DNA of 64,000 bases from Klebsormidium nitens (GCA_000708835.1 DF237169.1:62001-126000), one strand, 5' to 3'. Positions 25,001 to 53,014 are shown, counted from the first letter of the stretch. Notes: a model not told the origin generated them from the letters alone. Numbers and translations: made by a program.

Positions 25001-28000
25001 GCGCATGTGCTTCGGATCCATTCCATCTCCAGCAGACGTCTTGCGGTGAAGTATGGGAGGCCACAGACTGAGACACAGCTAACAAGGGACTGAAAAGAAG
25101 GTCACGATGAAACGGACAGGTAGGCACAGAATGGACTTATCTATCGTACATGGGCCCCTGAGACGGGGTGTTCGTGCAACTTGGGGCAAAGGGGGACAAG
25201 CTCTCCTCTCCGAAGCCCGGTCGACATTCAGCCGCGTCGATGGTTTCCCTTCGACTTTCACTTCCGAATATGCCAATGCCAAACCACGGCTTTATTTCCT
25301 TTTCCTGGAGGTTGGCAATGCAGGTGAGCTTCAACTTCGCAACCTTATACTAACAGAAAAGGGGAGACCGAAAGATCAGTCTTACCATCGTAAACCGTCC
25401 ATGCGCGAGGAAAGAGCGCGTGGTACGTCGACTTGTCCCCTTTCAGATTCCAACCCCATGTGGCTATCCCCGTCGGGGGCTCAGGCGCCTTCTTCTTGTC
25501 CTTCGGCTTCGGGGGACTGCAAGAAGGTTATGCGAGTTGTCAACGATAACAGTCTGCTTTGTACGCACCTCACAACCTGAGATTAAATTTTTCCAAGGCT
25601 TGGCCCAGATGGAGGAGGGCAGCAAGCACGCTCAAGGAAACGTTGATTGAAAGCAGGAAGCAGTCGCCAAAAATTGAAGCATGCATCCTGGCAACGAGGG
25701 GACACGCTTAGTTGCGCGAACCAATAGTGGCGGCGAAGTAAGTGCTTGCGATATACAGCACGAGTTGGAATCCTGTTGACATGACTACTTGAGAAATAGG
25801 GACCAGATATCGTCACTGATCCAAAGATTTGAGTTGACCACCCACATCAGCTCCTCAGGGCGCCCGGGGTAGAGCACGCTGGAGAACCTCTTGTGCCCGT
25901 CTGCTCCTCGCTTGATGAAAACCTACGGTGAAGAAAAGCGAACTGAGAATTGATAACGCCTCAGGAAAGATGATGCGAAGGCCTTGGAGGCAATCAGCAA
26001 ATCTTGGGAAACATGACCCGCCGTCCAGGCAACGACCCAGCCTTTTGCGGGCCAACAAAGGCGTCCTGTGGTGTCGAATCCTCTGCACTTCTTTACATTT
26101 GAAAACATTTACTTGAGCCTTTCATGAAGTCGGATGTGACACGTCTGCAGTTGGCCGCAATATTTTTCCTGTCGAAAGACATTCTGACAGTGAGCACATG
26201 GCTCTACTCAACGGTCCAAGCCATGCGTTTCGATTATTTTAGCTGGTACTACGAATTGTCTGCCTCTTCCTCTCTAACAAATCGTCGAACCCCTTGCAAA
26301 AGACTCACGGAAAACTGATCAGCTAGCACAGGCGCCTCGTCACAGATCCCCGGCTGAAGCTGCCATCGCCGGAAGTCCCCCCGCCAGCCCCTGCCAATGC
26401 TTCCCCCCCTGTACAGCATGAGAAACAATAAGGAACCTTTCTTGGAATCAACACATCAATTCGTCAGTATCTGGCAGCTATTTCCACGGCAACCGTTTTT
26501 CTTGGAACTTATACATCAATTCGTTACTATCTGGTCAGCTGATTCCATAACCATCGTCTGTTGTTTCTTTCCATCCAAATCTAGGATCAAAAACTGCACG
26601 ACAAAACCCCACTTGCATTCAGCCCCACAGGTCTCTTCCTCATACGCATCCAAACCAGTGGCGATGATAATTTTGCCCAATCTCCTCAATCAAACCCGCA
26701 CTGAAAGTGATGTTTGTTGACAGAGTCATCAGCAAGGAATGTTTGACGGAAACAGCTCTCACCCAATGCCCCCAAGTGGGACACCGTGGCACGCCTGTGG
26801 CCGCGTGACGGACTTATTGAACGGGTCAATGATTGGCACTCGTCCCTGGCTGCGCTCTTCCAGGACATGACGGTACAAGCGCAGGCCCAGTCGCGCCTGG
26901 ATATCAGAGGGGCCAGTGTCAAGGTCCAAGTTTTAGCTCCTAAGTACCAGACTGTGACGCGAAAATAAGTAGGAACTTAGACCTGCCGTCAACGCTACAA
27001 TACCTCTTTTACACACTCTGAACTTGGAGACAACACCTTTGGGCGTTGACTCAGCAGAGTCTCCATGCATGAGGCAGAGTAGTCCCTGAAAGTACTGGGT
27101 GCAAGCTCATCAGCGCCATTTGTCTGGAAGGTGGGGCATGTCAAAAAGAATGTCACGAAGTCTGCATGATTCATGTACAGTTCAACCTTCACATGTTTTG
27201 AGAATCTTTGACACATCCCCACGGCCCAGAGCAAGCACTCTGCCCCTGGCCGGAGTTGTTGCAGTATGCATTGTTTCGAGCCCCAACCAGAAACTTGCCG
27301 GGCGCAGAACCTCTCACCATCTTGAACGCCTCCGAGACTGTCACCGTGAACTCCTTGAGCAGACTGACGGGCAGGTTCAACTTCCGCCGCCACGCCAGGC
27401 TGGGGGGCGCCACGCCCTTTGTTGCTAGCTGCAGAACTCCCCCCCCCCAGATTTGCAACAATCAGTTTCTGCCAAATGGTGTGACCAGAGCAACTTTTGT
27501 ACGGTCCAGTGTAGGATCTCTTGGGTCAGGGGCACTCGTCTACTCTTTCAGCAGCGTGTCGCACTTGCATGCTGCCAGAAGGTAGGCAGTTCTGCTGAAC
27601 GTGTAAACTCTGGAATGACAGCGCACAACAGCTCATGCCCCTCATCTTTGAAATAGGGCAGAAAACACTGACAATTTACGCACCCAAGTCTCAAAGTTCA
27701 CGCAGAGTGTCTGAGCTCCATCTATGTAACATATTGAACTTTTTTGATTGTGCTTAGAGCAGACCTCTTCGCAGCTTCACTTGTTGCTTCATCCAGAATG
27801 TTGTCATTCCATGAAGTAGAGCTTGAACATATCACCATAGACTCAATACACGCAGCCACGTCGATTGCATGCCACTAGTCAAGCCCTTGATAAGATCAGC
27901 TTGAACGCAATCCGTGGCAGCAACTTCACTCAGAAGCCCATCAGCCAACCTCCTTCCACAGACCAACGCTTCTCCTAGCTAGTCTCCAACAAAGCTCTTC

Positions 28001-28160
28001 TCACCAACTGCAAGGTAGGCTTGTTGATGAAGTCGTTCAGCGGCCATGACGGCTTCCTTCTGTGCCCCGGTTTCAAGGAGAAGGACCCTGACTTGCTCCT
28101 CTCGTAAGTCTCCGACTTCTTAGATTCCAAAACTTTAGTGTGTTCAGGTCCGTCTGCCAT
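13065..28160 (-). CDS. GBA2: Non-lysosomal glucosylceramidase (GH116), about 23 exons
   Basis: Exons spell [19 protein letters not shown] (28005-28160), [14 protein letters not shown] (27318-27428), IDPF...[180 protein letters not shown]...[11 protein letters not shown] and last exon 13065-13319. These are hallmark GH116 motifs. Confidence 0.97.
15331..15390. repeat. Degenerate (CAAAC/CAAAA)n low-complexity tract just inside a GBA2 intron
   Basis: caaacctaaactcaaacccaaaacgaaaccccaaaatccaaattcaaacctcaaacctcaa. Confidence 0.6.
16760..16960. repeat. Degenerate purine-rich tandem repeat downstream of U1
   Basis: Recurrent ggaagg(t)ttgtggg.cagggaag.g and agtgttggac.tgga motifs at ~16785, ~16868 and ~16915. 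Confidence 0.7.
16990..17151 (-). ncRNA. U1: U1 spliceosomal snRNA gene (~162 nt) nested in a GBA2 intron
   Basis: Minus strand reads ACUUACCUGG (5' splice-site pairing end), SL1 loop GAUCACGAAG (17115-17124), SL2 loop AUUGCACUCC (17078-17087), SL3 ACACCC-UACG-GGGUGU, Sm site AAUUUGUGG (17022-17030) and SL4 GGGGGCUCGCG-UUCG-CGCGGCCCC. All are in canonical order and spacing. Confidence 0.97.
17174..17213 (-). promoter_or_regulatory. Putative U1 promoter: TATA box plus weak USE-like element
   Basis: TATAAA at 17179-17174, about -28 to -23 from the U1 5' end. CACCCACAACC at 17211-17201 is a partial match to the land-plant USE RTCCCACATCG. Confidence 0.6.
23290..23998. repeat. Intronic minisatellite, six ~115-122-bp units, abutting a GBA2 donor site
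   Basis: agacctcc(t)tttcc(c)ttg near 23321, 23437, 23551, 23668, 23784 and 23905; gcagctgcttcgaggtg near 23370, 23485, 23603, 23720, 23833 and 23955. Confidence 0.95.
24731..24840. repeat. Two-copy ~50-bp tandem repeat in a GBA2 intron
   Basis: atccagatgcccataaca(c/a)cgattctaagcag(t/a)ct(t/c)attcga(g/a)tcgagcc occurs twice, followed by a partial atccaga. Confidence 0.9.
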
Positions 28161-28968
28161 GACTGGAGTTCTAAGAGAGCTCCTTGCTGTTCGTTCTTGA
28201 AGCTAAGGCGTAATCACCCACAATGTAAATCACCCCCCTGGATTTCAAAGCACATCAGATGCATCCATTTGCCTCCGTCCTCGTCAATCGGCTGGCTAAT
28301 GCGCCACAGGCCTTTTAGCATCTGAAGGCCCACAAACGCTCAACCCGTTGAACATTCCAATGAAGTAGCGCATCTGACGTGAGGGGAAGCCCTTGCTATG
28401 ATCTCCAGATTGGGGGCCATGCATGGAACTGGAGTTTCAAATTCATCAGGGAAGCTGTCCCAACCCACGACATTGTTCAATTGGTGTAAGCAGGGACGAC
28501 TTTGTAACTTGCAGCCAATAGAAATTCTACAAGCTGCCACGTCGTTCTGCCATTTTGGCCTAGGGGTTAGTAGACAGCCTACCAGGCACCCCTCTCAGGG
28601 GTCCGGCGGAACTATCACTCATGACGTGGCACATGCACGTGGTCACTGCCCACGCAAGTCTGCTTTTCAGACTCCTTGATGATTGGTTCAACGAGCTCGC
28701 TGGCACTGCAGTCTCAGAGCAGAAGAGCTGGAGACTGAGGACCGTTTGCTAGGTGGTAGATAGCGCTAGTCAGCGACCAGCTAGCCGTCATGGGCGACAT
28801 GTGAAAGTCGTAGCTACTTACCCAAAGTTTTGCTTTGGAAACGTCGGAGCGTGGTTTGCTTGTTGGATTCAACAGTGTGCATCGCAGCTTTTTGTCATAC
28901 CCATCGGGCATAGCGTACAAGGCAGAGCGCAGCCGGCGATTCGATCGAAGCTGGCGAGTCTGAACCTG
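28161..28968. promoter_or_regulatory. Divergent promoter interval between GBA2 and the lectin-receptor gene
   Basis: Head-to-head ATGs at 28160 (-) and 28969 (+). Contains CCAAT 28515-28519, GCCACGT 28536-28542, ACGTGGC 28624-28630 and CACGTG 28636-28641. Confidence 0.5.
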
Positions 28969-31900
28969 ATGGCAGGCGTTTCTGCGCACTGCTTGCTCCT
29001 TGTCTTTTTGGGCAGTCTGCTTTCAGCTGCACTTGCACGTGAGTTTAGTTTGAGGTTGCTCATCCATTCGGGACGCTTGCTTTCACGGGTTGACAAACAG
29101 GGAGCTTGGACCTCACTTATAAGTTTGGACTGCTAGCCTTTCTCGATCGACGAGCTTTTGTCTCAGGTTTGAAAAGCTGCTTGCTGCTGTGATCTGGACA
29201 CGAAAAAGGCCACAATCGATTGAAAACAAATGGTCGACCACATGCTACAAGTCTTAGAGATGCATAGTGCGTGTGTGTATCTTTGTGTGTGTGTATGTCT
29301 GTTTGTGCGATGCATAGTGCCTAGCGGCCCCACAGGAAATCCATTCACTATGTCAAGGCCGGGTTGCCTACAGCTGGAGCGATGTGACAAGGATCTTTGT
29401 CTGTTCTCTGTTGTTCACCAAAACGATGCGGTAGACGCTACGATTGCCTCAAAACACACCGCATATCAGATGGTGTTGACACCTCTTTTGCCTTACCATT
29501 TCAAAAAACCCAGCTTTTATCACTTTGAGCAGGAGGGAGTGCCCTCTGTCCCTGTGTGGGGTGGTATGAATCTTGTCAGAATGTGGTAGCCATGTTTTGC
29601 ATGAGTGGCATAGGCTTTTTATGTTGTTCCAGTTCATTGAATAAACCTCAAAAGTCATTCTTTTCCGAAGCTCACCCGCTCATAGGCTTGAGCAAGCTGC
29701 TGCAGAAACCAGCTTTGCGTGCATGTTACCTCATCAGCTGCTTGCTTATCTGATGTGTGCAAAAGTACTCATGCTGGTGCATTGTTGGATTCAGAGTCGG
29801 ATGGGCCGCAAATGCTGCTCTTTGGCGACCATGTTGCGATGGCGAGAGCGGGCCCCAACTTTCCCACCACGCAGCTGACCTTTGAAACGTGGCTGAAGTC
29901 GCACGATGTGAGTATGCTAATGTTCATTGGTGCTGTGCTGGGAAATGTTGAATGATAGTAAAATCAATTCACTATCAATGCTTTTCGTATTTTGAAGGTA
30001 AGCGCGACATGTTGCTCTACAGAACATTGAATCCATTCACTGCAAAGAATTTAATTTTTGGCAATGCTGTGACATCGATGAATCTTTTCTTTGAAAGCTG
30101 TGTGCTTTCTTGCTGGACATTTCTTCTCCACCGACGTGAAGTGTTACTCAGTCTCACGGACTACTTTGAGGTGTGCCGCCAGGTACTCCAGCAGTGCCCA
30201 GGGTTGCTGGGTGCATTTGCACTACGCTTTTACGATTCAAAAGTCAGTCCCTTGCTTGAGGCAATTGAAGCCAGGCAGGTGTCTACTTTCATTGACTGAC
30301 CTCCACTCAAAGGACAGAAATTGTCTAGCCATCTCTTTACTTCCCCTTCTCCAGTTTTCAAACAAAGCAGAAGCGTTTCTAGGAGAAGCGAATCGGTTTG
30401 TATAGTGTCGGTTCAGTTTACACTGTCAAAGGAACGCTCCTGATCTTTCTGCCTGCTCTGACACGCGCAGACTTGCCACAAGTCCACGCCGTTCTCCTAC
30501 AGCGGCCCCAACAGTCCCGGCGGCAATGGATTTGTCATCTTTGACTCGGGCGATGACATGATTATCTGCATAGAGGAGCTGTACATCGTTCCAACATGCT
30601 ATGGGTGGCAAGATAATGGGATCAAAGTCGGCCTCTCGGACGGGCTTTGGCACCATCTGGCGGTGAGGACAGGAGTTGGACGTAGATGCAAGGATCCAGT
30701 GTCAAATCGATTTCTCATGGGGATGCAAACCCATCAAGCCTGCTCTGGTTGGGAGGAGCAATCGAGGCGGATCCAAGATGAACAGGAACCAACGGTCCGG
30801 TCGGGGTTTCAAGGATATGTCATGACTGTCTTTTACCAAGTTGGTTTATGATGAGAGGAACATTGATTCAGCAGTTTCGTGGACAAAAGATCTGTTCAAG
30901 CTGGGATTCCTCAACTTTCTTATCAAGCTGGTAGAGCACAGGCAGAGTCTCAGTAAGCTGAAAGGAACACCTTGTCTCATGGGTAGGTCTCATGGATCAG
31001 GTTCAGCCACTGCAAGCCTAGAGCAATTTCACAATTTTTCCTAGCTTTATCCAGATTTGAGATCGACAACCACTGTATGTTCCTTGTTGCAGGTCACTTG
31101 GAATGGCGAGCAGAGTGGCCGGGTGATGATCTACGTGGACGGGGTGCTGGCGAAGGCCTTTGACACCTTCAAAACGGGGCCGCTACCGGGCGGCGGAATC
31201 ATGGTCCTTGGCAATGAACAAGGTGAGGGGATAGGTCAGATTGGGGATAGATTTTCCCATTGCACAAAGCAGTAGGACCAATGCAAGAAGCATCGTGAGA
31301 TTTGATAGGGGAAGCAGGTCGTCTCTAAGTCGTCTGCGACTTGGTGTATCAGTTTGAGTGTTGATTGTTCAACTCGTTTTTGAAGGGAATGTTGCATGTT
31401 GCTGGGGTTGTTTCGAGACCCTTCCTTCTCTTCACCGCTGATTTCTGCCAGTCATGACGCAAAAATCCTTATTTGATAAAGTCAGTTAGAGCAAGGAAGG
31501 AGGGGCCGTGCGCACCATCCGCCATCGAAGGGATAGCTTCCAAAGCGCAGGATCAACCCCGTTGGGTCCGGCAGCGACCAGCTGTTGCGGTTGTCAGAAG
31601 CGTTTGACTCCGATTGGCTAAATTTCGAGAGAGGAGGGATGGCGGGGTGTCTGACAGAAACATAAGCAGGAAAGCCCCTGCGCTTTTCCCTTGAAGTGAC
31701 CCTATTTGGTACTCGTTCCCGGGCTCAAAATCTATACCCAAACTGTAACCCCCGTCGTTCTTCCAGATTGTGTGGGCGGCTGCTTTGAGACGGGCCAATC
31801 GTATTACGGTGCCATGGACGAGATCCGGCTCTGGAGGGTGGAGCGGAGCCAGGCCGAGATTCTGCAGTTGATGCACCAGTCAGGTCCGTTCTCCTAAGGG

Positions 31901-34900
31901 AGTTCATTAATCCAGCCCAGTTGGGTTTCACAAACGGATTCAATAGTTCGAATCAAACCTTTGGGTTTGTTCGTCCGTGCGTTTGTACGCATGGCAGGGA
32001 GTTCAAGCAAGGTCTATGATCCAGTACAACTGGGGCCAACAAATGACTCCAGCACTTGGGGTTTATTTTCTTGGAAGAGTTTGTTTGTTCGTTTGTTCGT
32101 ACACCTGACATTCAGTGCGTGGACGTGGATACTTGAGTGATACGCATGAACACGTCAATTGGTTGCCTAGCTTGCGGGTCGAGAGATGGATTGGAGTGCT
32201 TTGTTGCCAAAGGTTGGGAGCCTTCTTAGTGGAGGAGATTGAGGTAACGGAGGCATTAGCGGAAGAAAGAAGGCAAAAGGATCCGGCGTGTAGCTTTTGG
32301 TGTTGTCGTTTGGCTTACTACGATCGTTGATTGGCCGGCGCCTTAATCATGAAGGCCTGCGAAGGTCGAACCGAGCGGGCGTTCCTATACTCGCATTTAT
32401 CGTCATGTGGGGGCCGTGAAAGTGTAGGCTTTGCAAAGCGTTTCGATTGTTTTTGTACAGTCCGCGTCACATCGTCATAGCCTATGAACTTTGTTTCCCT
32501 CTCTCGTCGCTGGACAGGTAACCCAGTTCTGTCAGCGCCAGGAGCCAAGGACAATCTGGTGGGCTATTGGCCGCTTGATGAGAGAGGCGGGGACATTACT
32601 TTTGACAAGAGCCATCGAGGTGAGCTTCCTGCCAATTTAGATCAGTCGGCGTCGGCGGAAATGAGATATGTGCATTTGCGTGTGACACCAGCGACTGGCT
32701 TTTGTTGAAGTCTAGAATAGTTTTCAGGAAAGAGAAACGTTGTAGACGAGAGCAGCATGAATTAATCAGCTTATAATCGTTGGGACTTTGGTCAAGTAGC
32801 TTGACAAGAGGCTGTAGTTTTGTTGATATATGACAAAGGCTTTTCATCGCAGTGCCTTCGTTTTAGAAGCAAACACTCAACGAGCTTGCCTTCCTGCAGG
32901 GGGCAACAACTTCAACCTGACATTCCCTCCCGTTCACAACGTCACGAACGAGATGTTCCCGCTCAGGGGATCAACGAACAAAGTCCTTGCCTTCTCCAAC
33001 AACTTCGCAAGGAGCACAGCTGTGAAGACGTTCCCGACGGGCAGGTACGAAAGTTTGGGGCTCATCTCCGACTGCCGCCAAGCTTACTGAAGTCGCCCTG
33101 AGGGTTCGTCTATTTTGCACCAATCCCAGCCTTTTCCAGAGAAAGAGCAAGAAGGACGCATTTGCAATTTCGAAAGCGGTCCCGTCAAAGAGCACCTTTG
33201 ACATTCTTCCATAATTTCTAATCTCGTGATTTGGTCTCCTCTGATTGGTCCGGTTCACATGATCCATCCTGCAGCGCTCTTCCGGCTTTCCAAGGCCTTT
33301 AGAAGCTCGCATAAGGCACATTCGTCCGCCAATCGTTCTCGATTTGGAATGCACTCATTTGAACTCATGGGCAGAGCCACAACGTGCCCTGGCTGGCAAT
33401 TTGCAACACGCTTCATCGGGCTTGATTTTTGTTGTGCAGCTTTTCGGTGGAGATGTGGGCCGTTGATCAGAAGAACCTGGACGCAGGCTACGTGAATGAG
33501 GGCCGTAGCACGTGAGGACGCCTGTCGTATGTCCTTTTCCCTTCAAGCCGTAGTTCAACCACTGACTGCAGAGTCTGTTGAAATTCAACGAGAACATCGC
33601 AAAATTTAGCGGATTGCAAGGCCTCGAGCCGCTCTCGTTTGCTGTAGATTCTATTTAGGCTTTCAGCATACATAGTCCCGACGTGTCCGATTGTCTTTCT
33701 CGATGGCTCCCCTTTACTTTCAAAGTACTTGCAGGACTGCCTTCACTCTACTCCCTTGTGTACGATCTCGCAACATCATTTTCAATGAAGGTATCTTCGA
33801 CGGAACTGTTCAGGGTCGGAGAAAGTTGGAAGTTGCGAAAAAGCGCATGCAAACGGCTGTTTGGTCAGCCCTGCTACATCGGTAGTAAACGGTAGAGGGC
33901 TGACGGGATTGAGGTTTTTACCTGCGCAGTCTCTTTTCATACGCGGCCGAAGTCAGCACCCCAGATGAGTCGGGCAGCCACTTTGAGCCCCTGGCGGTCT
34001 GGATCTACAAGGACAACTCGGACGACCTCATGAGCGTCGTTATCAACTGTGAGAATACCCAACGTCACGGGCGGTTTCCCTTACTTAAACTTGACCAGCA
34101 GCGTTTCGTCGAGTATCCATGCAGGAAGCGTAGTGTGCAAAGTATTTTCCTTCGGGTTCCAAAAAGCTATCGTATGAATTCAGGTTGGGACTGCAACTGC
34201 TTACACTTAGTTTTTCCTTACCTCCCTGTTTCAAGAATTGCTGGACATTTTAGCAGCTTCGATCGTAATCCCAAAATTCATCAGAAATTGAAACCCGATA
34301 TCTGAAAACATGGCACCATCTATTCACCCCAGCTTCAAAGGGCGCCGATCAATTACTTAGCGCGCAAAACCCCCGTGCAGCCATGGTTTCTCGCGACACC
34401 GAAGTGTTTGCGGAAGACCACAAGTGGCACCACTACGCGCTGACGTGGGACGTAACCACCGGGGTAGCGATCCTCTACATGGACGGGCAGAAGATGTGGG
34501 ACGGCAGTGTCGACGCAGGGGCGACACGAGCTGCCAACGGGTGTCTCGTTTTGGGGCAGGTACGAATCATCTCCCGAGTAAAGTCCTGTAAAGTGCTTCG
34601 CTTCCTCCAGAACTTGTCTTTAGCGGGCTTGAAGTCCGTTTTCTACGACTTTCGGTCTCCAGGCCAGTTGAGCTGTCGGTATTTGTTTGCATAGTCTTAG
34701 CCATATCTGCCGAGGAGCCATGTTTCGGGGGTTTCAGTATGGTTGCGTCGCTTCTCTCAACACCGTCGAGCGGAATAAGCAGGTCTTCGTGGGTTCTAGG
34801 GCCCCCTCTTGGTGTGAGCGCGATCTAGAAATTGGATTGCGAAGATAAAGAATGTCAAACCGAGGCTTCTTTGTCTTCGCAAATCGGTTTGACACAATTC

Positions 34901-37900
34901 CCATCTTTCCTCTGTGCAGAACCAGCATTGCTGCGGCGGTTGTTTCGCCAGCGAGGAGAGCCTGCACGGAGGGCTCGCAGAGGTCCGGGTGTGGGATAAA
35001 GTCCTCTCTGACGCTGACGTAAGTGACCGCCTGGTTCGGAACGTCGTGACATAAATGATCGCTGCACTCTTCTCCGCTTCGCATTGGCTTGAGCGAAACC
35101 TGCTGGTTCGCTTGATTTGCAACTCATCTCAACTGCAGCGCAACATCGTCATGAGGAGTTTGTTGAAGCAGAGCTGATACTGGTGGTGCCGCTACCCGAA
35201 CAGCAATGCAGAGGAACGAGGTCTATTACTAGGAGTGCGAACAGAGGGGCGATGTGGGGCAGCAATTACAATTTCCGTTGGTTTGGCTCGCTCACAGTAA
35301 GGCACAAATGGATTTTGCGACACCGGTTTCAAACACTCTTACTGGCCACCTGACAACGACCTTGATTTCACTGCGTTTGCAGATTAGCGCCCACTACAAC
35401 CAGCCTATCCAGAATCCGGCCTCAGAGAAGGACCTTGCAATCTACTATGATTTCCAGAGGTGGGATCAATATGAAGGCCGTCGTTTGAGATCGGGTGTCA
35501 CTCGGTTTTCTCGTTGCTTGCCGTCTAATTGTGCGAGTTCGCTTTTTGCAGCCTTTTCCTACAAATGTGGCGTCAAAGTGTTGTCAGCTTTAAGATGTAG
35601 AACGCTGACATCATAAAGCTTTGGTACTCTTTTTGCCATCGGTAGAGTTAAGAGCTAAACGGTTTTGTGGTCGTGGCACCGCCTTGTACAGCGGACTTGT
35701 GAGGTCCATCGTTTGGGTAATGCTTGGCTTCAATAAAAGTCCCCCAAAAGGAAGGCCTCTGCTCAGTCTTCGTTCCGTTTGGATGAACTTGTGCGTCAAA
35801 CGCAAGAACCTGTAATACAATCAAACACAATTGCTCGTCTTGACTGAGAAAAGAACGAACCGAACTGGTCAGCTGGCGATGCTTCCCTTGATGTAGACGT
35901 CGAGTGGCTACCAAGCTGAAGAACTTGAATGGACACTCTTTGAGCCCAAACCTTTTTGCATTTTTTCTTGCTCAGGGATCAAGAGTCCCGGTATATGATC
36001 GTGGATGCTTCCGGCAAGGGCAATGACCTCATTCTTGGGAGCGCAGCGCCCCTTTGGCAGGTAAGCTTCAAGTGGTCTGCACCGTTAAGTTGCCATGCTG
36101 CTGTTGCAAGATACTCCCAGATCCGGTTAAAAGTATGCTGAGAAAGAGGGAACGCACTTTCCCGGTTCTCTTTCCGACTCCGTTGTCGGTGTCCTTGCTT
36201 CATATTGACACGCGGCGCAAAACATTCCACACCAAGGAGCCCGGGTGGCCGTTTGATGGCGCCTGTAAGCACTGCGTTTCGAGCACGTTTCTTTGACAAG
36301 CTACGAGCTTTCGGAAGCGTGCAGATCACTTAAGGAATCTTTCTGGCGACGTTAGACAATGAATATGGTGGGGTCTCTTTCAAAATCTGCTGCTGTCATT
36401 CTTCTGCTTAGGATTGATCCGACGCGATTCTGTTGCTTTGAGGTCAGAACAATATGTTCGTGCATGTCCTCTTGACCAGTGGCAAACACGACAAAATTCG
36501 CTTATGGTGTTCTTAGGAATCCACGTGTCCTCTGGAGGGCGAGTCCAAAGGCCCACCCCCGAACAGGAAAGGATATGCCGCCAGCCTCGACGGAACAGAG
36601 GCCCTCCTAGCCACGGCGGTGAAGGGTTTGGCTAATGACCAGGTAAGTTTCTGCTGGGCTGATGGTGTGTGCAGGCCATGTGTTTCAGTATCCTTTTACG
36701 GCTCGCGATATGCAGGTTCCAGCTTGTTTGCTTGTCTGACCTCCTGTATCGCTTTGTTTTACAATGCATGAAGGAACAAATGTCGGCTTGATTGTGAAAC
36801 AGCACTTTGCGGTGCTATTCCCACACTTGGTAAGCTCATGGCAATGTCAAAGTTATCCACTCCTGACGATCGATCTGATGTCAAAGCAATCTACTTTCCC
36901 GCCTTTCAAGCCTGATTTGCGTGGCGAAGTTCTTACTCTCTTGCCCCATAGCAGACGCGAGAAGTGGTTGAAACAAGCTCTTTGTCTCGTTTCTGCAGTT
37001 TACGTTCGAGGTCTGGATGCGCTCAATTGACGTGTGCAACGATGGCACGCTCTTTTCGTACCGCTTTGGTAACGGACCTGCGGACCAAGTCTATCTGATT
37101 AGGTGAGCGTCGAAAACATTGCTTTTTGGTGCTTTGTTTCACATGGTGGATTTTTGTTTTTGGCGTCGCTTGTCCCTAGGTTCAAAGAGGACAAGAGCAT
37201 GCATTTTTGGCATCGGACGGCGGTTGCAGACGCCTTTTTGAGAACTTCTGCTTAATCGTATATAGTTTTGTACAAGTTTGTATTCTGTGCATATCAAATT
37301 GACAAGCAGCACACACGATTTCGCGGTTTCCACCAACAGCTTTTCAAGCAGCTTGTCGTACTATTTTCGCAGAGGGGCGTTTTCGCTCTGATCTTGGAAG
37401 GGCTTCTGCTCTTAGTCTCTGTCTTTGCTTTCTGCAGGCGATCCGATTTGCGGGTGGGGCTCGAGATCGCTGTGAACGGGGACGTGAAAGGCACTGGCCT
37501 GCGAGCTGCCGACGGCACGTGGCACCACATCGCAGTCACGTGGAACTCTGCAGACGGGAGGACGATTATGTACAACGACGGGGTGGAGGTGTTCCGGGAC
37601 ACCTTCTCGAAGCAAAAGTGAGCTCCTTTTGCTGGTTAAGAGGAATAGCGTTTGTTATAATGCTAGGTGACTTGTGTCAACTGAGCGCGTTTCTCAAGCA
37701 ATAAGCATGGAAGTTGGTAGTCCGCCGAGGGAGTTTATATCTAGGTGCTTTTGATTGCTGACCTCTAGGACCTCGACATGGTGGTTTGTCTCTCCTCTTT
37801 TATGCGCTACTGTTTCAGTTGCTGCTTGTGGGGGCGCTTCTCAACGGTGGAGCGGCCGACCGTCAAAGCACCGCACATGATCCGCCTTCAATTTCTGCAT

Positions 37901-40631
37901 AGTTCGTTGGTCCCAGCAGGTTTGATTTCGAATCAAAAGGTATTGACAGCTGTCTAATCGTGGACTTTTAGTTGTTTCAAATAGTGTAGGCAAGTTTCTT
38001 GGCCCTCGTTTGCAGGGCGATTGCGGAGGGGGGCACGCTGTCCATTGGCGGCCACCTGGGCTGCGTGGGCGGGTGCATAAATTCCTCAAGCCCGATCAGT
38101 CCCGGGGACTCTTTCGTGGGCGACTTGGACGAGATCCGACTCTGGCGAAAGGCGCTCAGCGCGGCAGACATTGCTGCCCGGTGGAAGATGTTTGATATCA
38201 AGGTAAGCAAACTGTTTCTGGTTTGCAGTCGAAAGAATGGCGTTGTGTTTGGAAGTTGGTGGAGGTGGTTATGGTTTGCGTTGGAGGAGGTGACTTCAGG
38301 ACGGGTTGAGAGAGATTCTTTTCAAGCTTGTTCATGGACAAGGTTAGACGAGTCTTCCCGTTTGCAATTGAAGGAAGCCCTCCATCTGTTTGACACGGAA
38401 GGACCGGGCGTTTGTGGCGTTCTTGCGTCCAAATTGCCTGGAACTGACGCGCAGCTGTATGTCAGACGACGGCGTTCTGTCTTTTGACATACTTGCTTCT
38501 CATCAGCTTGAAGGCTTTGAACAAAGCGTATCTTTGCCGGAAGTGGGATACGTTCATACTCCTTTCATGTGTCAAAAGCTTTGGTGGTGAACTTGACCGA
38601 TTGAATGTATGCGGCTGCAGGCGACCAGCGATCTGGCTGGGTATTGGACCTTCGACGAGGGCCAGGGTTTCGCCACCCGGGACGTGGGTCGGTACGGGAA
38701 TCACCTTTCCTTTACAAGGCCGCCCACGTTTTTGGTGAGTTCGGGATCTTGCTCTACTGTTTGCAGCTTTTGTCTTGGTGTAGTTGCGCACGGGATGGCT
38801 CCAACCTGAGGAGATTGCTTGTACATGTATTCCGGAGGACATCATATTGTTCCCCAAAATACTTGACCGAGGAGCTTGCTGCGCTAACGTAAAAGCTTCT
38901 GACCATTTGGTATTAGTTAGCCCTGATGATTCTTTCGTCTGCAAGCTTTGTGGTTCGCCTTATGGGTCAGTCCAGCACCACTGAGAAATCAGATCTACCA
39001 GAGTTGTTCTGCGACCAAGTGTTTTTACGCACAAGCCCGTTTAGTTCAAGGCGTGGCGGCATGTCATAGTGATTGTCCAGGTTCGAAGGCCGGCTAAGCA
39101 GCTCTTTCTGAGAGCTTGTACGCTTCACTTCTCAGCTCTTCTGACATGATTCGTCTCGGTATTTCGATTGCAGATAAGCACTGCTGGCGAGTATGCTGCG
39201 ACAGGGGGGCAGCCCCCTCCAGGGGGCAGCCGGAAGGGCTTCCGATGGGCATGTGAGTAATGGCTCCATTCATGATTTGCCTGTACTCGGTCGAAATAAC
39301 AAAACGCTCCTTGCATGCTTCTGAAAATTTCCTTCGTCCGCCCTTAAATTGACTGCCTGCGAGGGTTTCTCTTGATTCCTGGAACCCTTCAGTCCTTGTG
39401 GTCAAAAGGCTGTAGGAAAGTACTAGTCTGATGATAACGCCCACGCATCGGACCCGAACTTCTATTCACAGCTCGACTGGTTCGCGCCCAGAGGAGCTTA
39501 AATAAGCCACAACCGTCATTTCTGGAGCAGGCTCTTGTGACACTCGATGGACTCGATACTGTACTGTCAACTATGTTCAGAGCTACAAGACTGTCTTAGT
39601 GATGACTACCCTTTCACCTACTTGCCCTTTCTTGTCTTATGCAGCATTTTTCATCACTGTCCTGGGCTTGGCGGTGTTGGGCGCCGTCGGTTATCTCGTG
39701 TACCTAAGATGGGAGGTCGTCTCGCCACTGTAAGGAGCGTTCTCCTATCCTTTCCGTGGCTGGCTGATTGTGGTTACAGTTTGTTCTTTCTCTTTGAATT
39801 GACTATCTGTTGCCGGTCTTTAGACTCAGCAAATGACATTCTCTGTTGGAGAGAGCTGGAATTCTGATTGGCAGAGTTACTTTTAAGACCGTCGGCAACT
39901 TGAAGGCTCTTCGAAGGCTCTTGAAAGTGTCTCCATCAAAACCCGCTCATGATGTTGAGAAATGACCGCGCCGTATGCTCATTTCGTGTACGTGTTTGAG
40001 CAGGAAAGTATCCCCCCAAGAACGTGTTGGATTTTTCGCGAAACCGCTTTGTCTTTTCTGTGTTGTACACTCATCGGATTGCAGCAGGTTGGCCCCGCTT
40101 CGACTTATGTTCGGCACTGATTGTGCCCTGTTTCCACAGTGTGGACGTGGCTTTGGATACGGGTGTGAACGCGTTCAACAGCGTGAAGGAGCGCTTATTT
40201 GGGCAGCGCTATGCGCGGAATACGCTCCTGGAGGAGCTCGACGGGTAAGCAAGTTCACAACTGACACCCATCGGGAACACGGGTTTGCAATACCTGGAAA
40301 AGGGCTGCGCTCTTTCTACGGCGACTGGTGCCAAAGCCAAGTTCTCTGACGTGTTTTGCAATACATCAGCCGATCGAAATATTTTGCCATTCATATGGGC
40401 TGTCAGCTTTTCATTGGCTGTTTACGCGCCTTTCAAGGACGACTTTTGGGAATTTTTCCGGTCCAAAAAGAGCTGCTCTGTGTTTCAACGGATTTGAGCG
40501 TAGAGTCCGTAGGCTGTTGCTCGTCGAATCTAAGCTCATTTTGAGATGAACGCATTCTGCGATGCAGGGGCCTCGATGACTACACGCCGCCGCCAGAAGA
40601 CATGGCAGACTTTAGTGCTGGAAGGCATTAA
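28969..40631 (+). CDS. Type-I membrane protein with signal peptide, three tandem pentraxin/LamG-like (ConA-fold) domains, one TM helix and a short acidic tail (~850 aa, 22 predicted exons)
   Basis: Signal MAGVSAHCLLLVFLGSLLSAALA (28969-29038). Each repeat carries FT/SxExW..FSY (TFETWL..PFSY; FSVEMW..LFSY; FTFEVWM..LFSY), WHH.A.TW, C.GGC (DCVGGCF; HCCGGCF; GCVGGCI), G..DE.R.W and L.GYW..DE. TM FFITVLGLAVLGAVGYLVYL at ~39646-39705. Tail exons ~40140-40245 and 40568-40631. Intron phases are consistent throughout. Confidence 0.85.
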
Positions 40632-46538: not shown

Positions 46539-49500
46539 CTGCACGTGCCCATTCAAGCGGCCCTCCTGGTGCATCCCTTGCAAAGAGACAGAGTTTTGGG
46601 GGTCACCTCTGCCGGGCCAGCGGGGACCCCCCCTTGCAGCGGCCAGTTTTAAGGACTGGCCCCCCAGCCTGTGACTAACAGTGTCATGGCGGCCGCCAGT
46701 AGTCCGGTCCCAGGGGTGTCCAAGGCTGCTGACCCCAAGACTCCTGGGGAAGCTTCCCCGGCGCCCCAATTCAAAACCCCAGCCAGCTCTGTCCCCCCTC
46801 CCCAAGCCCAAACATCAAGGGATCCCCCGTCTGGAACCTCATTCAAAGCACTGCCATGCGGAGAGGATGTGGAGACCATGAGCGTCCGGCAGCTGAGGGA
46901 AGCACTCAAGGAGCGCGGCCTGAACTCGCACGGCTTGCTGGAGAAGCGGGAGTTCCAGGACCTGCTGAGAGCGCATCTGCCTCCTATCACCCCGGAACGC
47001 GCAGATGCCACGCCCGCAACCGCGAGCGTCTCTGACGGCACAGCGGAACAGATGCCGGCTGCAGATGAGTCGGTTGCTCATGCTGGTGCCAGTACACCCC
47101 TTGCGAGCAAGCCGTCAGACAAGCCGAGTCGTGTACCGAACGGTCCGTTGGAAGGAGGTGGGGCTGCAGCAGGACGCGATTCTCTGGATGGAACGCCACT
47201 CAAGGAGGATGCTTCAAAGACGTCTGCAAGTCCTCCAAGTGGGGGGTCTACAGCCACCCCCACTGACAGCTCGGACCCCCTCCCGAAAACTCCGAGTGCC
47301 ACCCCTCCGGGCGAGGGCATCCCTCCTTCGAATTGGTTCAAAGAGAGCCGGGTAGACAAGGCTCCACAGACCGTAGCGGGAAGGAAAAAGGGTACTCAGG
47401 GAGAGGAAACACAGACAACAATACGGCCCAGGCGGACGGGCAGGCGAGTGCGTTTCACGCCCATGATGCAGGGCAGGCCGCGAGCACCGGTTTTCAGGCC
47501 GAAGGCGGAGCAAGAAGGTGCTGAGGAGAGGGAAGTTTTGGAGCACGAGGTTGAGGTCACAGTTCTGGAGGGGCTTCAGGGGTCGGCCAACAAGGAGAAG
47601 TGGATTTTCCAACGGGATGAAAAGGGACATCTTCGGTCGCAGAGCGGTACGCGCAGCGAATCGGACAGCGGTTCCGAGCGTCGTTCCAGGGCAAAGAGAG
47701 CCAGGGGGAAGGCCGCCGAGGCGAGGACTGCGAATGCGCCTGGGTCTGGGCGGAGATGTGAAACGAAGACGGAAGGAGATGTCGGCCGGAAAGCTGTCAA
47801 AGAGAATGACGTTGTGGGGCCCCGCAGGTCGTCACTTGGGAGCAACAGCGATTCTGTGAAGGCGCAAGGGGGCGCAGGTGCAGCCCGGGTGAAGGAGACC
47901 GCCCGGAGGGGGCGCGGCGCGGAAGAGGACAGCGACAGCTCGAGCGATGACGACAGCGAGAGTGACTCGGGCAGCGGCAGCAGCAGCGGGAGCGGAGACG
48001 ATTCGTCCAGCAGCGAGGAGTCAGAGAGCGAGGTCGAGGGAGCGGCTCAGACGCCGTCCAACAGCGCGGGCGGTGCTGCCGAGTCAGCCATAAAGGAGAA
48101 CGGTGGCTCAAACGGGGATGCAAGCCCTGTCTCTGCAGCAAAGCAGATGGTCGAAACGGGAGTGAAACCATCCCCGGTTCGGGGGTCGGAGCAGGATGGA
48201 ATTCCCGAGCGCAGGGAGCGGGGGAGGCCCAGGCGCGTTGTTTCCAAAGCGGCAGAGCAGGCTGGCGCTTCGGAACCTGCGAGGAAACGCGGCAGGCCGG
48301 TTGGGCGGCCTGGGGGTCGTTCGACCCCGCAGAAAGCGCCCGGTTCGAGGAAGCCCCGGGCAGTGGGGTTGAAAACTAAGGTGAAGCGGTTCTGGACGAG
48401 CGTGAGGGCTCGCGCGCGTGCGCAAGAGCAGAACGCGAGCATCCTGCGGAGGAGCCGGAAGCTGTGGCGGCTGAAGACGGCGCCGGCGGACCAGGCGGCG
48501 GAGGCGCGGAAGCGACGGATCGAGGCACGCAAGGCCAAGGCTGGAGAGGTGGGCTCTGATTTCCTTCTTCTTGTCCTTTGAAGTTGCTGTTCCAAGCGGC
48601 GAGCGGCAGTCTGAGATTAGAGGCAATTTTTTGCAAGCTTCGTAAGTTTTTGGAGATTCCAAGGCCGTCCTGCCTTATTGAGCGTAACAAGAATGTGGTC
48701 GCATCCTTCTCAAGCTTGCGTGTGCAGTGCACTTTTCCTGCAAGGCATTTCGTGCCGTCCCTGACAGCACTCAGACACGAGCTGGAAATTTTCACCGAGT
48801 CTGTGTCGTTTGGGCACCTGATTTTGTGCACCTGTTCACCGCAAATAGAGCTGCTTCAAGGGCTGACTGCAGTCGATTTCAGTGTACTCGTACCCTCCTC
48901 TTTGAGGGAACGAAGGCACTTCTGGTTATGACTGATGGGAACGTGCAGGCCTGGCAGCCAGCGAATTTCCGCCAGACGTCAAAGTTTTCCCAGTGCGCCT
49001 CGGACCTTGCTTTGCAGACACACTAGATCATGAGATGTCTCCATTGTTTGGACAAGTCAAGGATTCTGACGCCCCAGACGGACTTCGCCTGTGTTGCGTG
49101 TTTGAGGGTCTTTAAATTCATCGCCTCCCTTACAATCTGCAGGACGACAAGGCCTTCGCTCTGGCCAACCGCCAGAAACGCCTCGAGGCGCTCCAGGCCA
49201 AGGCCCTAGCCCGACGCGCAGCCGCCAAGCTCCGGGCAGAGAAGGCCGCGGCAAAGAAAGCCGCTGCGGCTCACGATCCGGCCACGGCGAAAGAGCGGGT
49301 TCCCTCGACAAAACACAACCCTGCGCCAGGACCCAGAATCGATCCCGGAATGCAGAAACGGCGGCGGCCGTCAGTGTCGATCCTAGAGGCGGCGGTGAAA
49401 CGGCAGGCAGCGAGGAACCTGGAAGTAGGGAAGGGGGAGCCGCTCGGGGAAGCACCCCGGGAAAGCGATGAGGGCTCTGGTTTCGCTGGAGCAGGCTCCC

Positions 49501-52500: not shown

Positions 52501-53014
52501 CGGGTCGGACGTGGCGGAAGAGAGCGAGAAGAGCGAAGAGGAGGAGTGGGAGAGTGCGGCGCTGGACGCGCTGCTAAAGTTCGAGTCCGGCAAGTTGAAC
52601 GTGGACGAAGAAGCCACTCCGCAGAGCAAGCTGAAGCGCTCGGACGTTCACATCGCAGAGGAAAAGGATGGGGTCACGAGCGTCGCCAACAGTGGCGCTC
52701 CCCAGAAAGCGAGGTCCGCTCCGGTCACTGAAACGGAAGTTGCAGAGCGGACGGAGGTTCCTGCCAGCCCAGCCGGAGGAGAGCAGAGTGCGAGCTCGGC
52801 AAAAAGCGCGCCCGGGACCCCACCGAGAGCAGAGCCGCCGGTTGCTGACGTGGAGAGCGTCCTCGACTGGGTGGCCGCGAAGGGCCGGTGCAACCTGGCT
52901 GACGTCAGCGGCAACTTTGCGGGCACGGCGCCGAGTGTGTTGGAGGGCCTGCTGCAAGATCTGTTGGGCAGTTTCGACATTGGCGTTGACAATGGTCACT
53001 ATTTTGTTCTGTAA
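46539..53014 (+). CDS. Very large (~1,700-1,800 aa) low-complexity, basic/acidic hypothetical protein with a SAP/ARMET-C-like module and small C-terminal domain
   Basis: Exons ~46539/46686-48549, 49143-50097 and 50654-53014, phase-consistent. VETMSVRQLREALKERGLNSHGLLEKREFQDLL resembles helix-extended-helix SAP-like motifs. KHRGKHKRRHKH tracts are present. The C-terminus VLDWVAAKG..LEGLLQDLLGSFDIGVDNGHYFVL* is folded-looking. 5' end uncertain: candidate upstream exons near 45482-45625 and 46061-46147. Confidence 0.7.

What the first reader, a model, noticed from the sequence alone, without database searches (positions are those of the whole stretch)
28969..40631. Triple pentraxin/LamG-like type-I membrane lectin, a candidate undescribed algal cell-surface receptor
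The gene is split over 22 small exons, so it is invisible as a unit in the ORF track. Architecture is signal peptide, three complete ConA-fold repeats, a Gly/Pro linker, one TM helix and a short tail with no kinase domain. Each repeat has a C-x-G-G-C motif at the same position, probably a disulfide loop. Pentraxin-type lectins are established pattern-recognition and adhesion proteins in animals. I know no land-plant protein with this architecture, so it may represent a glycan-sensing or adhesion system retained in algae and lost on land (inference).
Basis: partly seen in the sequence, partly recalled or inferred. Interest (0 to 1): 0.75.

Follow-up and report, generated by a model that had tools for sequence, protein, structure and literature searches.

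The report
Triple-pentraxin membrane protein of green algae
This is a real 21-exon algal gene for a single-pass membrane protein with three pentraxin-type (C-reactive-protein-like) domains on the outside. It belongs to an unstudied family found across green algae that I did not find in land plants.

Summary
On the + strand, 21 GT-AG exons (28969-40248) join into one open frame of 837 codons. The product has a signal peptide, three ConA-fold domains, a 26-residue Gly/Pro linker, one TM helix and a tail of about 44 residues with no kinase.

Two orthologous loci from related algae are collinear. Their substitutions fall mainly on third codon positions (229 of 301 and 307 of 445), so every exon and frame is under purifying selection.

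The domains are pentraxin-type. A profile of the relatives matches neuronal pentraxin 1 at E 5e-27. An AlphaFold model of a Micractinium orthologue superposes on NP1, SAP and CRP at Z 22-23, above LamG/LNS domains (Z 14-16).

The gene is not unique. About 90 protein clusters show the same layout, domain by domain. Every named one is a chlorophyte, auto-labelled "Pentraxin (PTX) domain-containing" or "ConA-like lectin". C-x-G-G-C is a family hallmark. It lies inside the loop that binds Ca2+ in CRP.

The window's gene lacks the family's DUF4215 cysteine-rich module. It keeps the Ca2+-site residues only in domain 1. No land-plant relative and no paper on the family turned up. Lectin activity and cell-surface location remain inference.

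Earlier scan notes on this genome do not mention pentraxins.

The parts
28969..29038 (+). E1: start codon and signal peptide (23 codons + 1 nt)
   Evidence: First ATG of the ORF. Hydrophobic core KD19 2.09. GTGAGT donor. 83% aa identity in L001.
29738..29907 (+). E2: start of PTX domain 1 (first strands, ...LTFETWLKSHD)
   Evidence: Family profile positions 20-65, iE 9e-9. Third-position substitution bias.
30471..30662 (+). E3: PTX domain 1 core (TCHK..PFSY..GN..WHHLA)
   Evidence: Aligns to P0080 residues 77-156.
31093..31222 (+). E4: PTX domain 1 (VTW...VLGNEQ). The last nt starts the Asp codon of the E-Q-D Ca2+-site triad.
   Evidence: Pfam Laminin_G_3 79-127. Family profile 147-189, iE 7e-12. 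Junction codon GAT = D.
31767..31883 (+). E5: PTX domain 1, CVGGC loop followed by F-E-T-G-Q and the MDEIRLW strand
   Evidence: Pfam Pentaxin 132-169. Family profile 191-227, iE 2e-18. Aligns to the zebrafish CRP loop 145-174.
32518..32619 (+). E6: C-terminal strands of PTX domain 1 (LVGYWPLDE...)
   Evidence: Matches the family's LVAYWxFDE segment. That segment lies inside the pentraxin superposition.
32900..33044 (+). E7: start of PTX domain 2. Carries two conserved N-x-T sequons.
   Evidence: Family profile 265-310. Sequons counted. 94% and 87% aa identity in the orthologues.
33440..33511 (+). E8: PTX domain 2 (FSVEMW strand)
33957..34048 (+). E9: PTX domain 2
34381..34559 (+). E10: PTX domain 2 core (WHHYALTW...LVLGQ)
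   Evidence: Pfam Laminin_G_3 26.7 bits and Pentaxin 23.5 bits. Query of the exhaustive search.
34920..35018 (+). E11: PTX domain 2, CCGGC loop. The Ca2+-site residues are degenerate (N-Q-H).
   Evidence: Pfam Pentaxin 26.9 bits, above the 25-bit cut-off. Family profile 485-516.
35383..35459 (+). E12: C-terminal strands of PTX domain 2 (DLAIYYDFQ)
35976..36060 (+). E13: end of PTX domain 2 (D.SGKGNDLIL..PLWQ)
36517..36642 (+). E14: start of PTX domain 3
   Evidence: Family profile 577-618..
36999..37102 (+). E15: PTX domain 3 (FTFEVWMRSIDVC..FSY)
   Evidence: Family profile 622-646, iE 6e-9. 100% aa identity in L001.
37438..37617 (+). E16: PTX domain 3 core (WHHIAVTWNS)
   Evidence: Pfam Laminin_G_3 27.0 bits. 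Family profile 678-713, iE 7e-16.
38016..38202 (+). E17: PTX domain 3, CVGGC loop. E-Q-D is replaced by H-L-G.
38621..38734 (+). E18: C-terminal strands of PTX domain 3 (LAGYWTFDEGQG...). It is not a fourth repeat.
   Evidence: Aligns to P0080 residues 792-823. Solved pentraxins superpose on P0080 577-833.
39174..39252 (+). E19: Gly/Pro-rich juxtamembrane linker
   Evidence: 100% and 92% aa identity in the orthologues. Substitutions almost all at third positions.
39645..39729 (+). E20: transmembrane helix (SFFITVLGLAVLGAVGYLVYL) and start of the tail
   Evidence: KD19 2.22. 92-93% aa identity in the orthologues.
40140..40248 (+). E21: cytosolic tail ending ...FGQRYARNTLLEELDG, then stop TAA
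   Evidence: The last 16 residues are invariant in all three genomes. L002 similarity ends at the stop codon.
40249..40631 (+). Probable 3' UTR
   Evidence: About 67% nt identity to L001 only. No frame continues past the stop.

Best explanation
The locus is one functional gene of 21 coding exons. It encodes an 837-residue type I membrane protein. In order it has a cleavable signal peptide, three complete pentraxin-type beta-jellyroll domains (E2-E6, E7-E13, E14-E18), a short Gly/Pro linker, one TM helix, and a tail of about 44 residues with no enzyme domain.

It is the Klebsormidium-type member of an old green-algal family of triple-pentraxin membrane proteins. Each of its three domains is closest to the domain at the same position in chlorophyte proteins. 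The triplication therefore predates the chlorophyte-streptophyte split.

Most likely mechanism (inferred). The ectodomain binds an extracellular or lumenal ligand through the pentraxin-type Ca2+ site of domain 1. That domain keeps N, E-Q-D and E..Q at the positions that bind two Ca2+ in CRP and SAP. A family-specific C-x-G-G-C pair is probably a disulfide that staples this loop. Domains 2 and 3 have lost those residues here and would act as scaffold or as protein-binding faces.

With no catalytic tail, the protein would pass on or use binding through its short, highly conserved tail. That makes it an adhesion, wall-sensing or co-receptor type molecule, or a trafficking receptor.
For: Shown:
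- A consistent GT-AG model with an open frame.
- Third-codon-position substitution bias in every exon against two orthologous loci, with 93% and 83% aa identity.
- A hydrophobic N-terminus and one TM segment only.
- Exon-wise Pfam hits to Laminin_G_3 and Pentaxin in three successive sets.
- Collinear mapping of the exons onto a 53-sequence family profile.
- Domain-by-domain best matches to chlorophyte proteins. E2, E4 and E5 hit domain 1. E11 hits domain 2. E15 and E16 hit domain 3. E18 hits the post-domain-3 segment.
- About 87-95 family clusters with E below 1e-100, followed by a gap down to bacterial LamG proteins at about 1e-30.
- The family profile hits neuronal pentraxin 1 and 2, PTX3, CRP and SAP (E 5e-27 to 3e-9).
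- The AF2 model of the Micractinium orthologue has pLDDT 81 and pTM 0.78.
- That model superposes on NP1, NP2, SAP and CRP at Z 22-23, rmsd 2.2-2.6 A, over 193-203 residues.
- C-x-[GA]-G-C occurs in all three domains, and [EQ]QDC in domains 1 and 3, across the family.
- E5 aligns to the CRP Ca2+ loop.

Inferred: Ca2+ binding, the disulfide, the nature of the ligand, and where the protein sits in the cell.
Against: - I have no RNA evidence for the splicing. A degenerate search for the E4-E5 junction in metagenome contigs found nothing.
- The spliced protein itself could not be searched or folded, so the structural claims rest on a homologue about 40% identical.
- Two of the three domains lack the Ca2+-site residues.
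- The classical pentraxin Cys of the HxCxS/TWxS/T signature is Ala in all three domains.
- No glycan-binding evidence exists for any family member. Pentraxin and LamG folds often bind proteins or lipid head groups rather than sugars.
- Localisation is unknown.
Confidence: 0.55

Rival explanations
1. It is an endomembrane cargo or sorting receptor rather than a cell-surface receptor. In this reading it is a lumenal Ca2+-dependent binding module on a type I anchor, and its short conserved tail carries trafficking signals. ERGIC-53/VIP36 and plant vacuolar sorting receptors work this way.
For: The layout matches such receptors: ConA-fold ectodomain, one TM and a short tail. The tail end (FGQRYARNTLLEELDG) is invariant in three genomes. 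Chlorophyte tails share R..IYD..P.V and a near-invariant Tyr. The family appears to be single-copy and widely conserved, which suits a housekeeping role.
Against: There is no match to the L-type lectin cargo-receptor family in Pfam. No canonical KKxx, YxxPhi or acidic di-leucine motif is readable in the Klebsormidium tail (sequence). No localisation data exist.
Confidence: 0.2
2. It is a Ca2+-independent protein-protein adhesion or matrix-linker molecule. It would use its jellyrolls as neurexin and laminin LNS/LG domains do, with no lectin activity.
For: The whole model also matches multi-LNS proteins such as neurexin-1 alpha and laminin LG. Two of three domains here lack the Ca2+-site residues. 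pTM 0.78 suggests a fixed three-domain body.
Against: Pentraxins score clearly higher than LNS/LG domains (Z 22-23 against 14-16). Domain 1, the best-conserved domain (about 87% aa identity to L002, against about 79% for domain 2), keeps the complete E-Q-D / E..Q set. Chlorophyte members keep that set in domains 1 and 3.
Confidence: 0.2
3. The exons do not form one expressed gene. It would be an annotation-style artefact, a pseudogene, or several genes.
For: No transcript evidence was obtained (look-up of encoding contigs closed). No annotated or spliced protein of this gene came back from three protein searches.
Against: All 21 exons keep frame. Every junction has consensus splice sites. No exon contains a stop. 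All exons show strong third-position bias in two other genomes. The exon order matches full-length intronless or cDNA-derived relatives.
Confidence: 0.03

Closest known systems
Chlorophyte 'Pentraxin (PTX) domain-containing' / 'concanavalin A-like lectin/glucanase' hypothetical proteins. Examples: Micractinium KAL4421057.1, and proteins of Tetradesmus obliquus, Coccomyxa subellipsoidea, Bryopsis, Chlorella sorokiniana, Gonium pectorale.
   Same: They share the signal peptide, three PTX domains with C-x-G-G-C in each, the LVAYWxFDE closing strands, one TM helix and a short tail with related motifs. Best matches run domain by domain, at about 40% identity in conserved exons.
   Different: They are about 1000-1100 aa and carry a DUF4215 cysteine-rich module between PTX3 and the TM helix. 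They also have a longer tail. Most keep E-Q-D in domain 3. The window's gene has no DUF4215 exon, has H-L-G in domain 3, and has a tail cut short after ...LDG.
Animal pentraxins (CRP, SAP, neuronal pentraxins NP1/NP2, PTX3)
   Same: Same fold (Z 22-23). Significant sequence relationship (E 5e-27). Shared WHH.x.TW core strand. The Ca2+-loop sequence E-Q-D-x-x-G-G-x-F-E/D-x-x-Q is conserved in domain 1. The assignment of these positions to CRP D60, N61, E138, Q139, D140, E147 and Q150 is from my own knowledge.
   Different: Animal pentraxins are soluble single-domain subunits that form rings, or they have a coiled-coil N-terminal part. Here three domains sit in tandem on a type I anchor. The signature Cys is Ala. 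Two extra cysteines bracket the GG of the Ca2+ loop.
PTX-like domains of membrane proteins (neuronal pentraxin receptor; adhesion GPCRs ADGRG4 and ADGRG6; SVEP1)
   Same: A pentraxin-type domain is displayed on a membrane protein's ectodomain. ADGRG4 PTX scores Z 17.8 and Gpr126 scores Z 17.7.
   Different: Those proteins have one PTX domain combined with other modules and a 7TM or type II anchor. No triple-PTX type I protein appeared among the solved structures or the papers searched.
Pappalysin (PAPP-A) N-terminal LG domain plus cysteine-rich repeat
   Same: The chlorophyte family members match the PAPP-A LG domain (Z about 20-21). Their DUF4215 part matches a PAPP-A segment by sequence (E 1e-9 to 1e-11).
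   Different: There is no metalloprotease domain. The DUF4215 part is missing altogether from the window's gene.
L-type lectin cargo receptors (ERGIC-53, VIP36) and plant L-type lectin receptor kinases
   Same: A ConA-fold ectodomain on a type I membrane anchor.
   Different: They belong to a different ConA-fold family; no PF03388 or PF00139 hit was found. They have one lectin domain rather than three. The receptor kinases have a kinase domain, which is absent here.

Membership tests
Pentraxin (PTX) domain family (Pfam PF00354) | A beta-jellyroll of about 200 residues that superposes on solved pentraxins | tested here: met
   Tested on the Micractinium orthologue, not on the window's own protein (the joined step was left out). 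NP1, NP2, SAP and CRP score Z 22-23, rmsd 2.2-2.6 A, over 193-203 residues against model residues 577-833. The window's exons map collinearly onto that family.
Pentraxin (PTX) domain family (Pfam PF00354) | Sequence match to the Pentaxin profile at or above the gathering score | tested here: met
   The piece holding exon E11 scores 26.9 bits against a 25-bit cut-off. The E10 piece scores 23.5 and the E5 piece 18.5; these are short pieces of a split domain. Full-length relatives score 97-147 bits with three stretches.
Pentraxin (PTX) domain family (Pfam PF00354) | Pentraxin signature H-x-C-x-[ST]-W-x-[ST], whose Cys forms the intradomain disulfide | tested here: not met
   The three domains read WHHLAVTWNG, WHHYALTWDV and WHHIAVTWNS. 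The Cys position is Ala in all three. The rest of the motif is kept fully only in domain 3.
Pentraxin (PTX) domain family (Pfam PF00354) | Double Ca2+ site (CRP D60, N61, E138, Q139, D140, E147, Q150; numbering from my own knowledge) | tested here: inconclusive
   Domain 1 has G-N, E-Q-D and E..Q, which is 6 of 7 positions. Domain 2 has N-Q-H. Domain 3 has H-L-G. These are residues only; no binding was measured.
Pentraxin (PTX) domain family (Pfam PF00354) | Soluble cyclic oligomer (pentamer or similar) | not testable with these tools
   Here the domains are tandem and membrane-anchored. The oligomeric state is unknown.
Green-algal triple-PTX type I membrane proteins (unnamed family) | Signal peptide, three PTX domains, one C-terminal TM helix, short tail | tested here: met
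   for the window's gene. for the relatives.
Green-algal triple-PTX type I membrane proteins (unnamed family) | C-x-[GA]-G-C in each of the three domains at the Ca2+-loop position | tested here: met
   CVGGC in E5, CCGGC in E11 and CVGGC in E17. Most full-length relatives carry three such motifs about 250-300 residues apart.
Green-algal triple-PTX type I membrane proteins (unnamed family) | Position-specific (domain 1/2/3) orthology | tested here: met
   E2, E4 and E5 hit domain 1 best. E11 hits domain 2. E15 and E16 hit domain 3. E18 hits the post-domain-3 segment, in P0080, P0036, P0091 and P0099 alike. Profile coordinates agree.
Green-algal triple-PTX type I membrane proteins (unnamed family) | DUF4215 cysteine-rich module between PTX3 and the TM helix | tested here: not met
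   No piece in any + strand frame of 28000-42000 matches profile positions of about 850-900. The only hit there is spurious at iE 0.76. Some chlorophyte members also lack a recognisable module.
LamG/LNS domains (PF02210, PF00054) and Laminin_G_3 (PF13385) | Best match to LamG-type profiles or structures | tested here: inconclusive
   Laminin_G_3 scores 26.7-27.0 bits on single exons, just under the 27.6 cut-off, and 95-161 bits on the relatives. Structurally, LNS/LG domains score lower than pentraxins (Z 14-16 against 22-23). These are the same clan; the pentraxin branch fits better.
Lectin receptor kinases / receptor-like kinases | Cytosolic protein kinase domain | tested here: not met
   The tail after the TM helix is about 44 residues and ends at a conserved stop.

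The most novel reading that the evidence does not exclude
Pentraxin-type Ca2+-dependent recognition would not be an animal invention. A triple-pentraxin membrane receptor with a disulfide-stapled Ca2+ loop would already have existed in the common ancestor of chlorophytes and streptophytes. It would serve as a wall, glycan or microbe sensor in green algae, and it would have been lost on the way to land plants, which use other ectodomains (LysM, malectin, L-type lectin) for that job.
Probability: 0.2. Interest if true: 0.7.

Novelty: new variant of a known kind. Interest (0 to 1): 0.5.

Why it matters
Pentraxins are textbook animal innate-immunity and synapse-organising proteins. This gene shows that a close structural and sequence relative sits on a membrane anchor in green algae. 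The family is conserved from chlorophytes to a streptophyte alga, has its own stapled Ca2+ loop, and nobody seems to have studied it.

If it binds wall or microbial ligands, it would be a class of algal surface receptor that plant lectin surveys have not counted. Those surveys use twelve land-plant lectin families and omit pentraxins (PMC6362431). It would also be a candidate for a gene lost at terrestrialisation.

It is a tractable target. The ectodomain should be expressible, and orthologues exist in transformable chlorophytes.

The protein searches did not return this gene's product. Its public gene model may therefore be missing or wrong.

Tried and rejected
1. E18 as the stump of a fourth repeat. 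Rejected. Solved pentraxins superpose over the homologous segment as the closing strands of domain 3. E6 and E12-E13 play the same part for domains 1 and 2.

2. An extra exon in intron 1 (conserved block 29347-29395). Rejected. It is conserved only in L001, has no convincing frame, and is not needed for phase.

3. A hidden DUF4215 exon. None found.

4. Single exons against PDB sequences. Too short to be significant.

5. ESM Atlas look-up of a relative. It returned only generic bacterial and viral LamG clusters, so it gave no taxonomic help.

6. MAFFT alignment of all 20 exons with full-length relatives (A1). The exons were shredded, so it was not used as a profile. A cleaner one (A4) was checked with hmmbuild before use.

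7. A spliced E4-E5 junction pattern in metagenome contigs. No match.

8. The look-up of encoding contigs to identify the source assembly, its public gene model and RNA contigs. I therefore took the organism name (Klebsormidium nitens) only from earlier scan notes and did not verify it.

9. Literature. No paper links pentraxins with green algae. One survey reports PF00354 absent from red algae (PMC11766507).

Left out by rule: the joined 837-residue model was never sent to a search or fold. Everything was done exon by exon by reference, or on database relatives.

Full report
**The gene.**
- The window is eukaryotic nuclear DNA. It holds a U1 snRNA gene and no long ORFs in the region of the finding.
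- Stop-to-stop pieces on the + strand show a three-fold internal repeat.
- Exon-sized pieces hit successive parts of Pfam Laminin_G_3 and Pentaxin three times over.
- An exhaustive search with the piece holding exon 10 found two short ORF fragments at 73-87% identity. These fragments led to two genomic loci from related algae, L001 and L002.
- Both loci are collinear with the window over 21 blocks, separated by unalignable introns.

**The exon model.**
- A search over AG/GT sites near those blocks, requiring an open frame, gave one best chain of 21 exons. It runs 28969-40248, 2514 nt, 837 codons plus TAA. Splice consensus is strong at every junction.
- In this frame, substitutions at codon positions 1/2/3 are 42/30/229 against L001 and 86/52/307 against L002. 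The bias is present in each exon.
- Proteins are 93% and 83% identical exon by exon.
- Each exon is therefore coding, in the frame given, and under purifying selection in three genomes.
Positions 40249-40631 are 3' UTR.

**Architecture.**
- Only E1 and E20 contain a hydrophobic 19-mer (KD 2.09 and 2.22). These are a signal peptide and one TM helix.
- The tail is about 44 residues.
- E19 is a 26-residue Gly/Pro linker. It is 100% and 92% conserved in the orthologues.
- There are two conserved N-x-T sequons in E7.
- There are 15 cysteines outside the signal peptide.

**A family, not a one-off.**
- Among the first hits, several proteins carried C-x-G-G-C two or three times.
- They share one layout: signal peptide, three Pentaxin/Laminin_G_3 domains, a DUF4215 cysteine-rich module, a TM helix and a tail.
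- Two profile searches returned about 87-95 clusters with E below 1e-100. There is then a gap to bacterial LamG proteins at about 1e-30.
- All named members are chlorophytes:
  - Trebouxiophyceae: Micractinium, Chlorella, Coccomyxa, Apatococcus, Trebouxia.
  - Chlorophyceae: Tetradesmus, Monoraphidium, Raphidocelis, Haematococcus, Dunaliella, Gonium, Volvox, Pleodorina, Chlamydomonas eustigma.
  - Ulvophyceae: Bryopsis, Caulerpa, Ostreobium.
  - One pedinophyte.
- Their names are automatic: 'Pentraxin (PTX) domain-containing protein', 'concanavalin A-like lectin/glucanase'.
- No embryophyte and no named streptophyte appeared.
- The window's exons match these proteins domain by domain. E2, E4 and E5 hit domain 1. 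E11 hits domain 2. E15 and E16 hit domain 3. E18 hits the segment after domain 3.
- The exons also map collinearly on a 53-sequence profile. The triple arrangement is therefore older than the chlorophyte-streptophyte split (inference).
- The window has no DUF4215 exon.

**Pentraxin, not merely ConA-fold.**
- The family profile hits neuronal pentraxin 1 (E 4.6e-27), NP2, PTX3, Limulus SAP-like pentraxin, CRP and SAP among solved structures.
- An AlphaFold2 model of the Micractinium member, built with the family alignment, has mean pLDDT 81 and pTM 0.78.
- Foldseek finds pentraxins at TM 0.72-0.75 per domain.
- VIA-align gives NP1 Z 23.0, NP2 22.7, SAP 22.1 and CRP 21.9, with rmsd 2.2-2.6 A over 193-203 residues. 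LNS/LG domains reach only 14-16.
- The superposition spans model residues 577-833. That range includes the LVAYWxFDE... segment to which E18 aligns. So E18, and likewise E6 and E12-E13, encodes the closing strands of a pentraxin domain rather than a fourth repeat.

**The binding site.**
- In CRP the loop E138-Q139-D140-S-F-G-G-N-F-E147-G-S-Q150, together with D60 and N61, holds two Ca2+. This numbering is from my own knowledge.
- Domain 1 of the window's protein reads E-Q-D-C-V-G-G-C-F-E-T-G-Q. The D comes from the split codon at the E4/E5 junction. The loop aligns to zebrafish CRP.
- G-N occupies the D60-N61 position in E3.
- The two cysteines replace the residues that flank G-G. They are conserved in all three domains across the family. 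A loop-stapling disulfide is the likely role. I could not measure it because model coordinates are not exposed.
- Chlorophyte members keep E-Q-D in domains 1 and 3. In the window and in both orthologues, domain 3 reads G-H-L-G and domain 2 reads Q-N-Q-H.
- Domain 1 is also the best-conserved domain. I therefore expect one Ca2+-dependent site per molecule.

**The tail.** The last 16 residues are identical in the three genomes. The tail is alignable with the juxtamembrane and Tyr-containing motifs of chlorophyte tails. This points to a conserved cytosolic partner or sorting signal. No canonical motif is evident.

**What is not known.**
- I could not obtain RNA evidence.
- I could not confirm the organism. 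Earlier notes on this genome say Klebsormidium nitens.
- I could not see the public gene model. None of three protein searches returned this gene's own product.
- The joined 837-residue protein was deliberately not searched or folded.
- Absence from land plants rests on searches that score 8000 word-sharing candidates and list 120 hits.
- The literature held here has no paper on algal pentraxin-domain proteins. A plant lectin survey that includes K. nitens did not look for this fold (PMC6362431). A red-algal survey found no PF00354 (PMC11766507).

**Verdict.** This is a new, unstudied architectural variant of a known domain kind. It is conserved across green algae and is not peculiar to this genome.

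Noticed in passing
window 16991-17151 (-): A complete U1 spliceosomal snRNA gene (Rfam RF00003, 130.7 bits). Earlier scan notes already record it.
   Followed up: partly
window 29347-29395: A 49-nt block inside intron 1 is 84% identical in L001 but absent from L002. It has no convincing reading frame. It may be an intronic regulatory element or a chance remnant.
   Followed up: partly
window 6009-8624 (+), 46671-48581 (+), 50642-53014 (+): Three very long GC-rich (0.58-0.63) ORFs encode low-complexity Gly/Ala/Ser- or Lys/Glu/Arg-rich proteins. They gave weak tblastn matches to a low-complexity part of an unrelated 5632-aa protein.
   Followed up: no
P0005 (Ostreobium quekettii CAD7701100.1, 2822 aa): It carries C-x-G-G-C seven times and about nine PTX domains, with a TM helix near the C-terminus. 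It looks like three tandem copies of the triple-PTX unit on one anchor.
   Followed up: partly
Family members, e.g. P0080 residues ~834-880: The DUF4215 cysteine-rich module of the chlorophyte proteins matches a segment of human pappalysin-1/2 by sequence (E 1e-9 to 1e-11). The adjoining PTX domain matches the pappalysin LG domain (Z about 20-21). So this two-module pairing is shared with an animal metalloprotease.
   Followed up: no
P0001 (1902 aa) and P0002 (1579 aa), ENA metagenome contigs: These were the best full-length hits to exon 10 in the exhaustive search (E 3e-51 and 7e-39). They hold 7-8 repeats at about 36% identity, and their origin is unknown. They are multi-PTX proteins outside the triple-PTX family.
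   Followed up: no
window 28000-28164; L001 3926-4090; L002 1475-1635: The end of the upstream neighbouring gene is conserved at the same relative place in both related loci. Local gene order is therefore shared.
   Followed up: no
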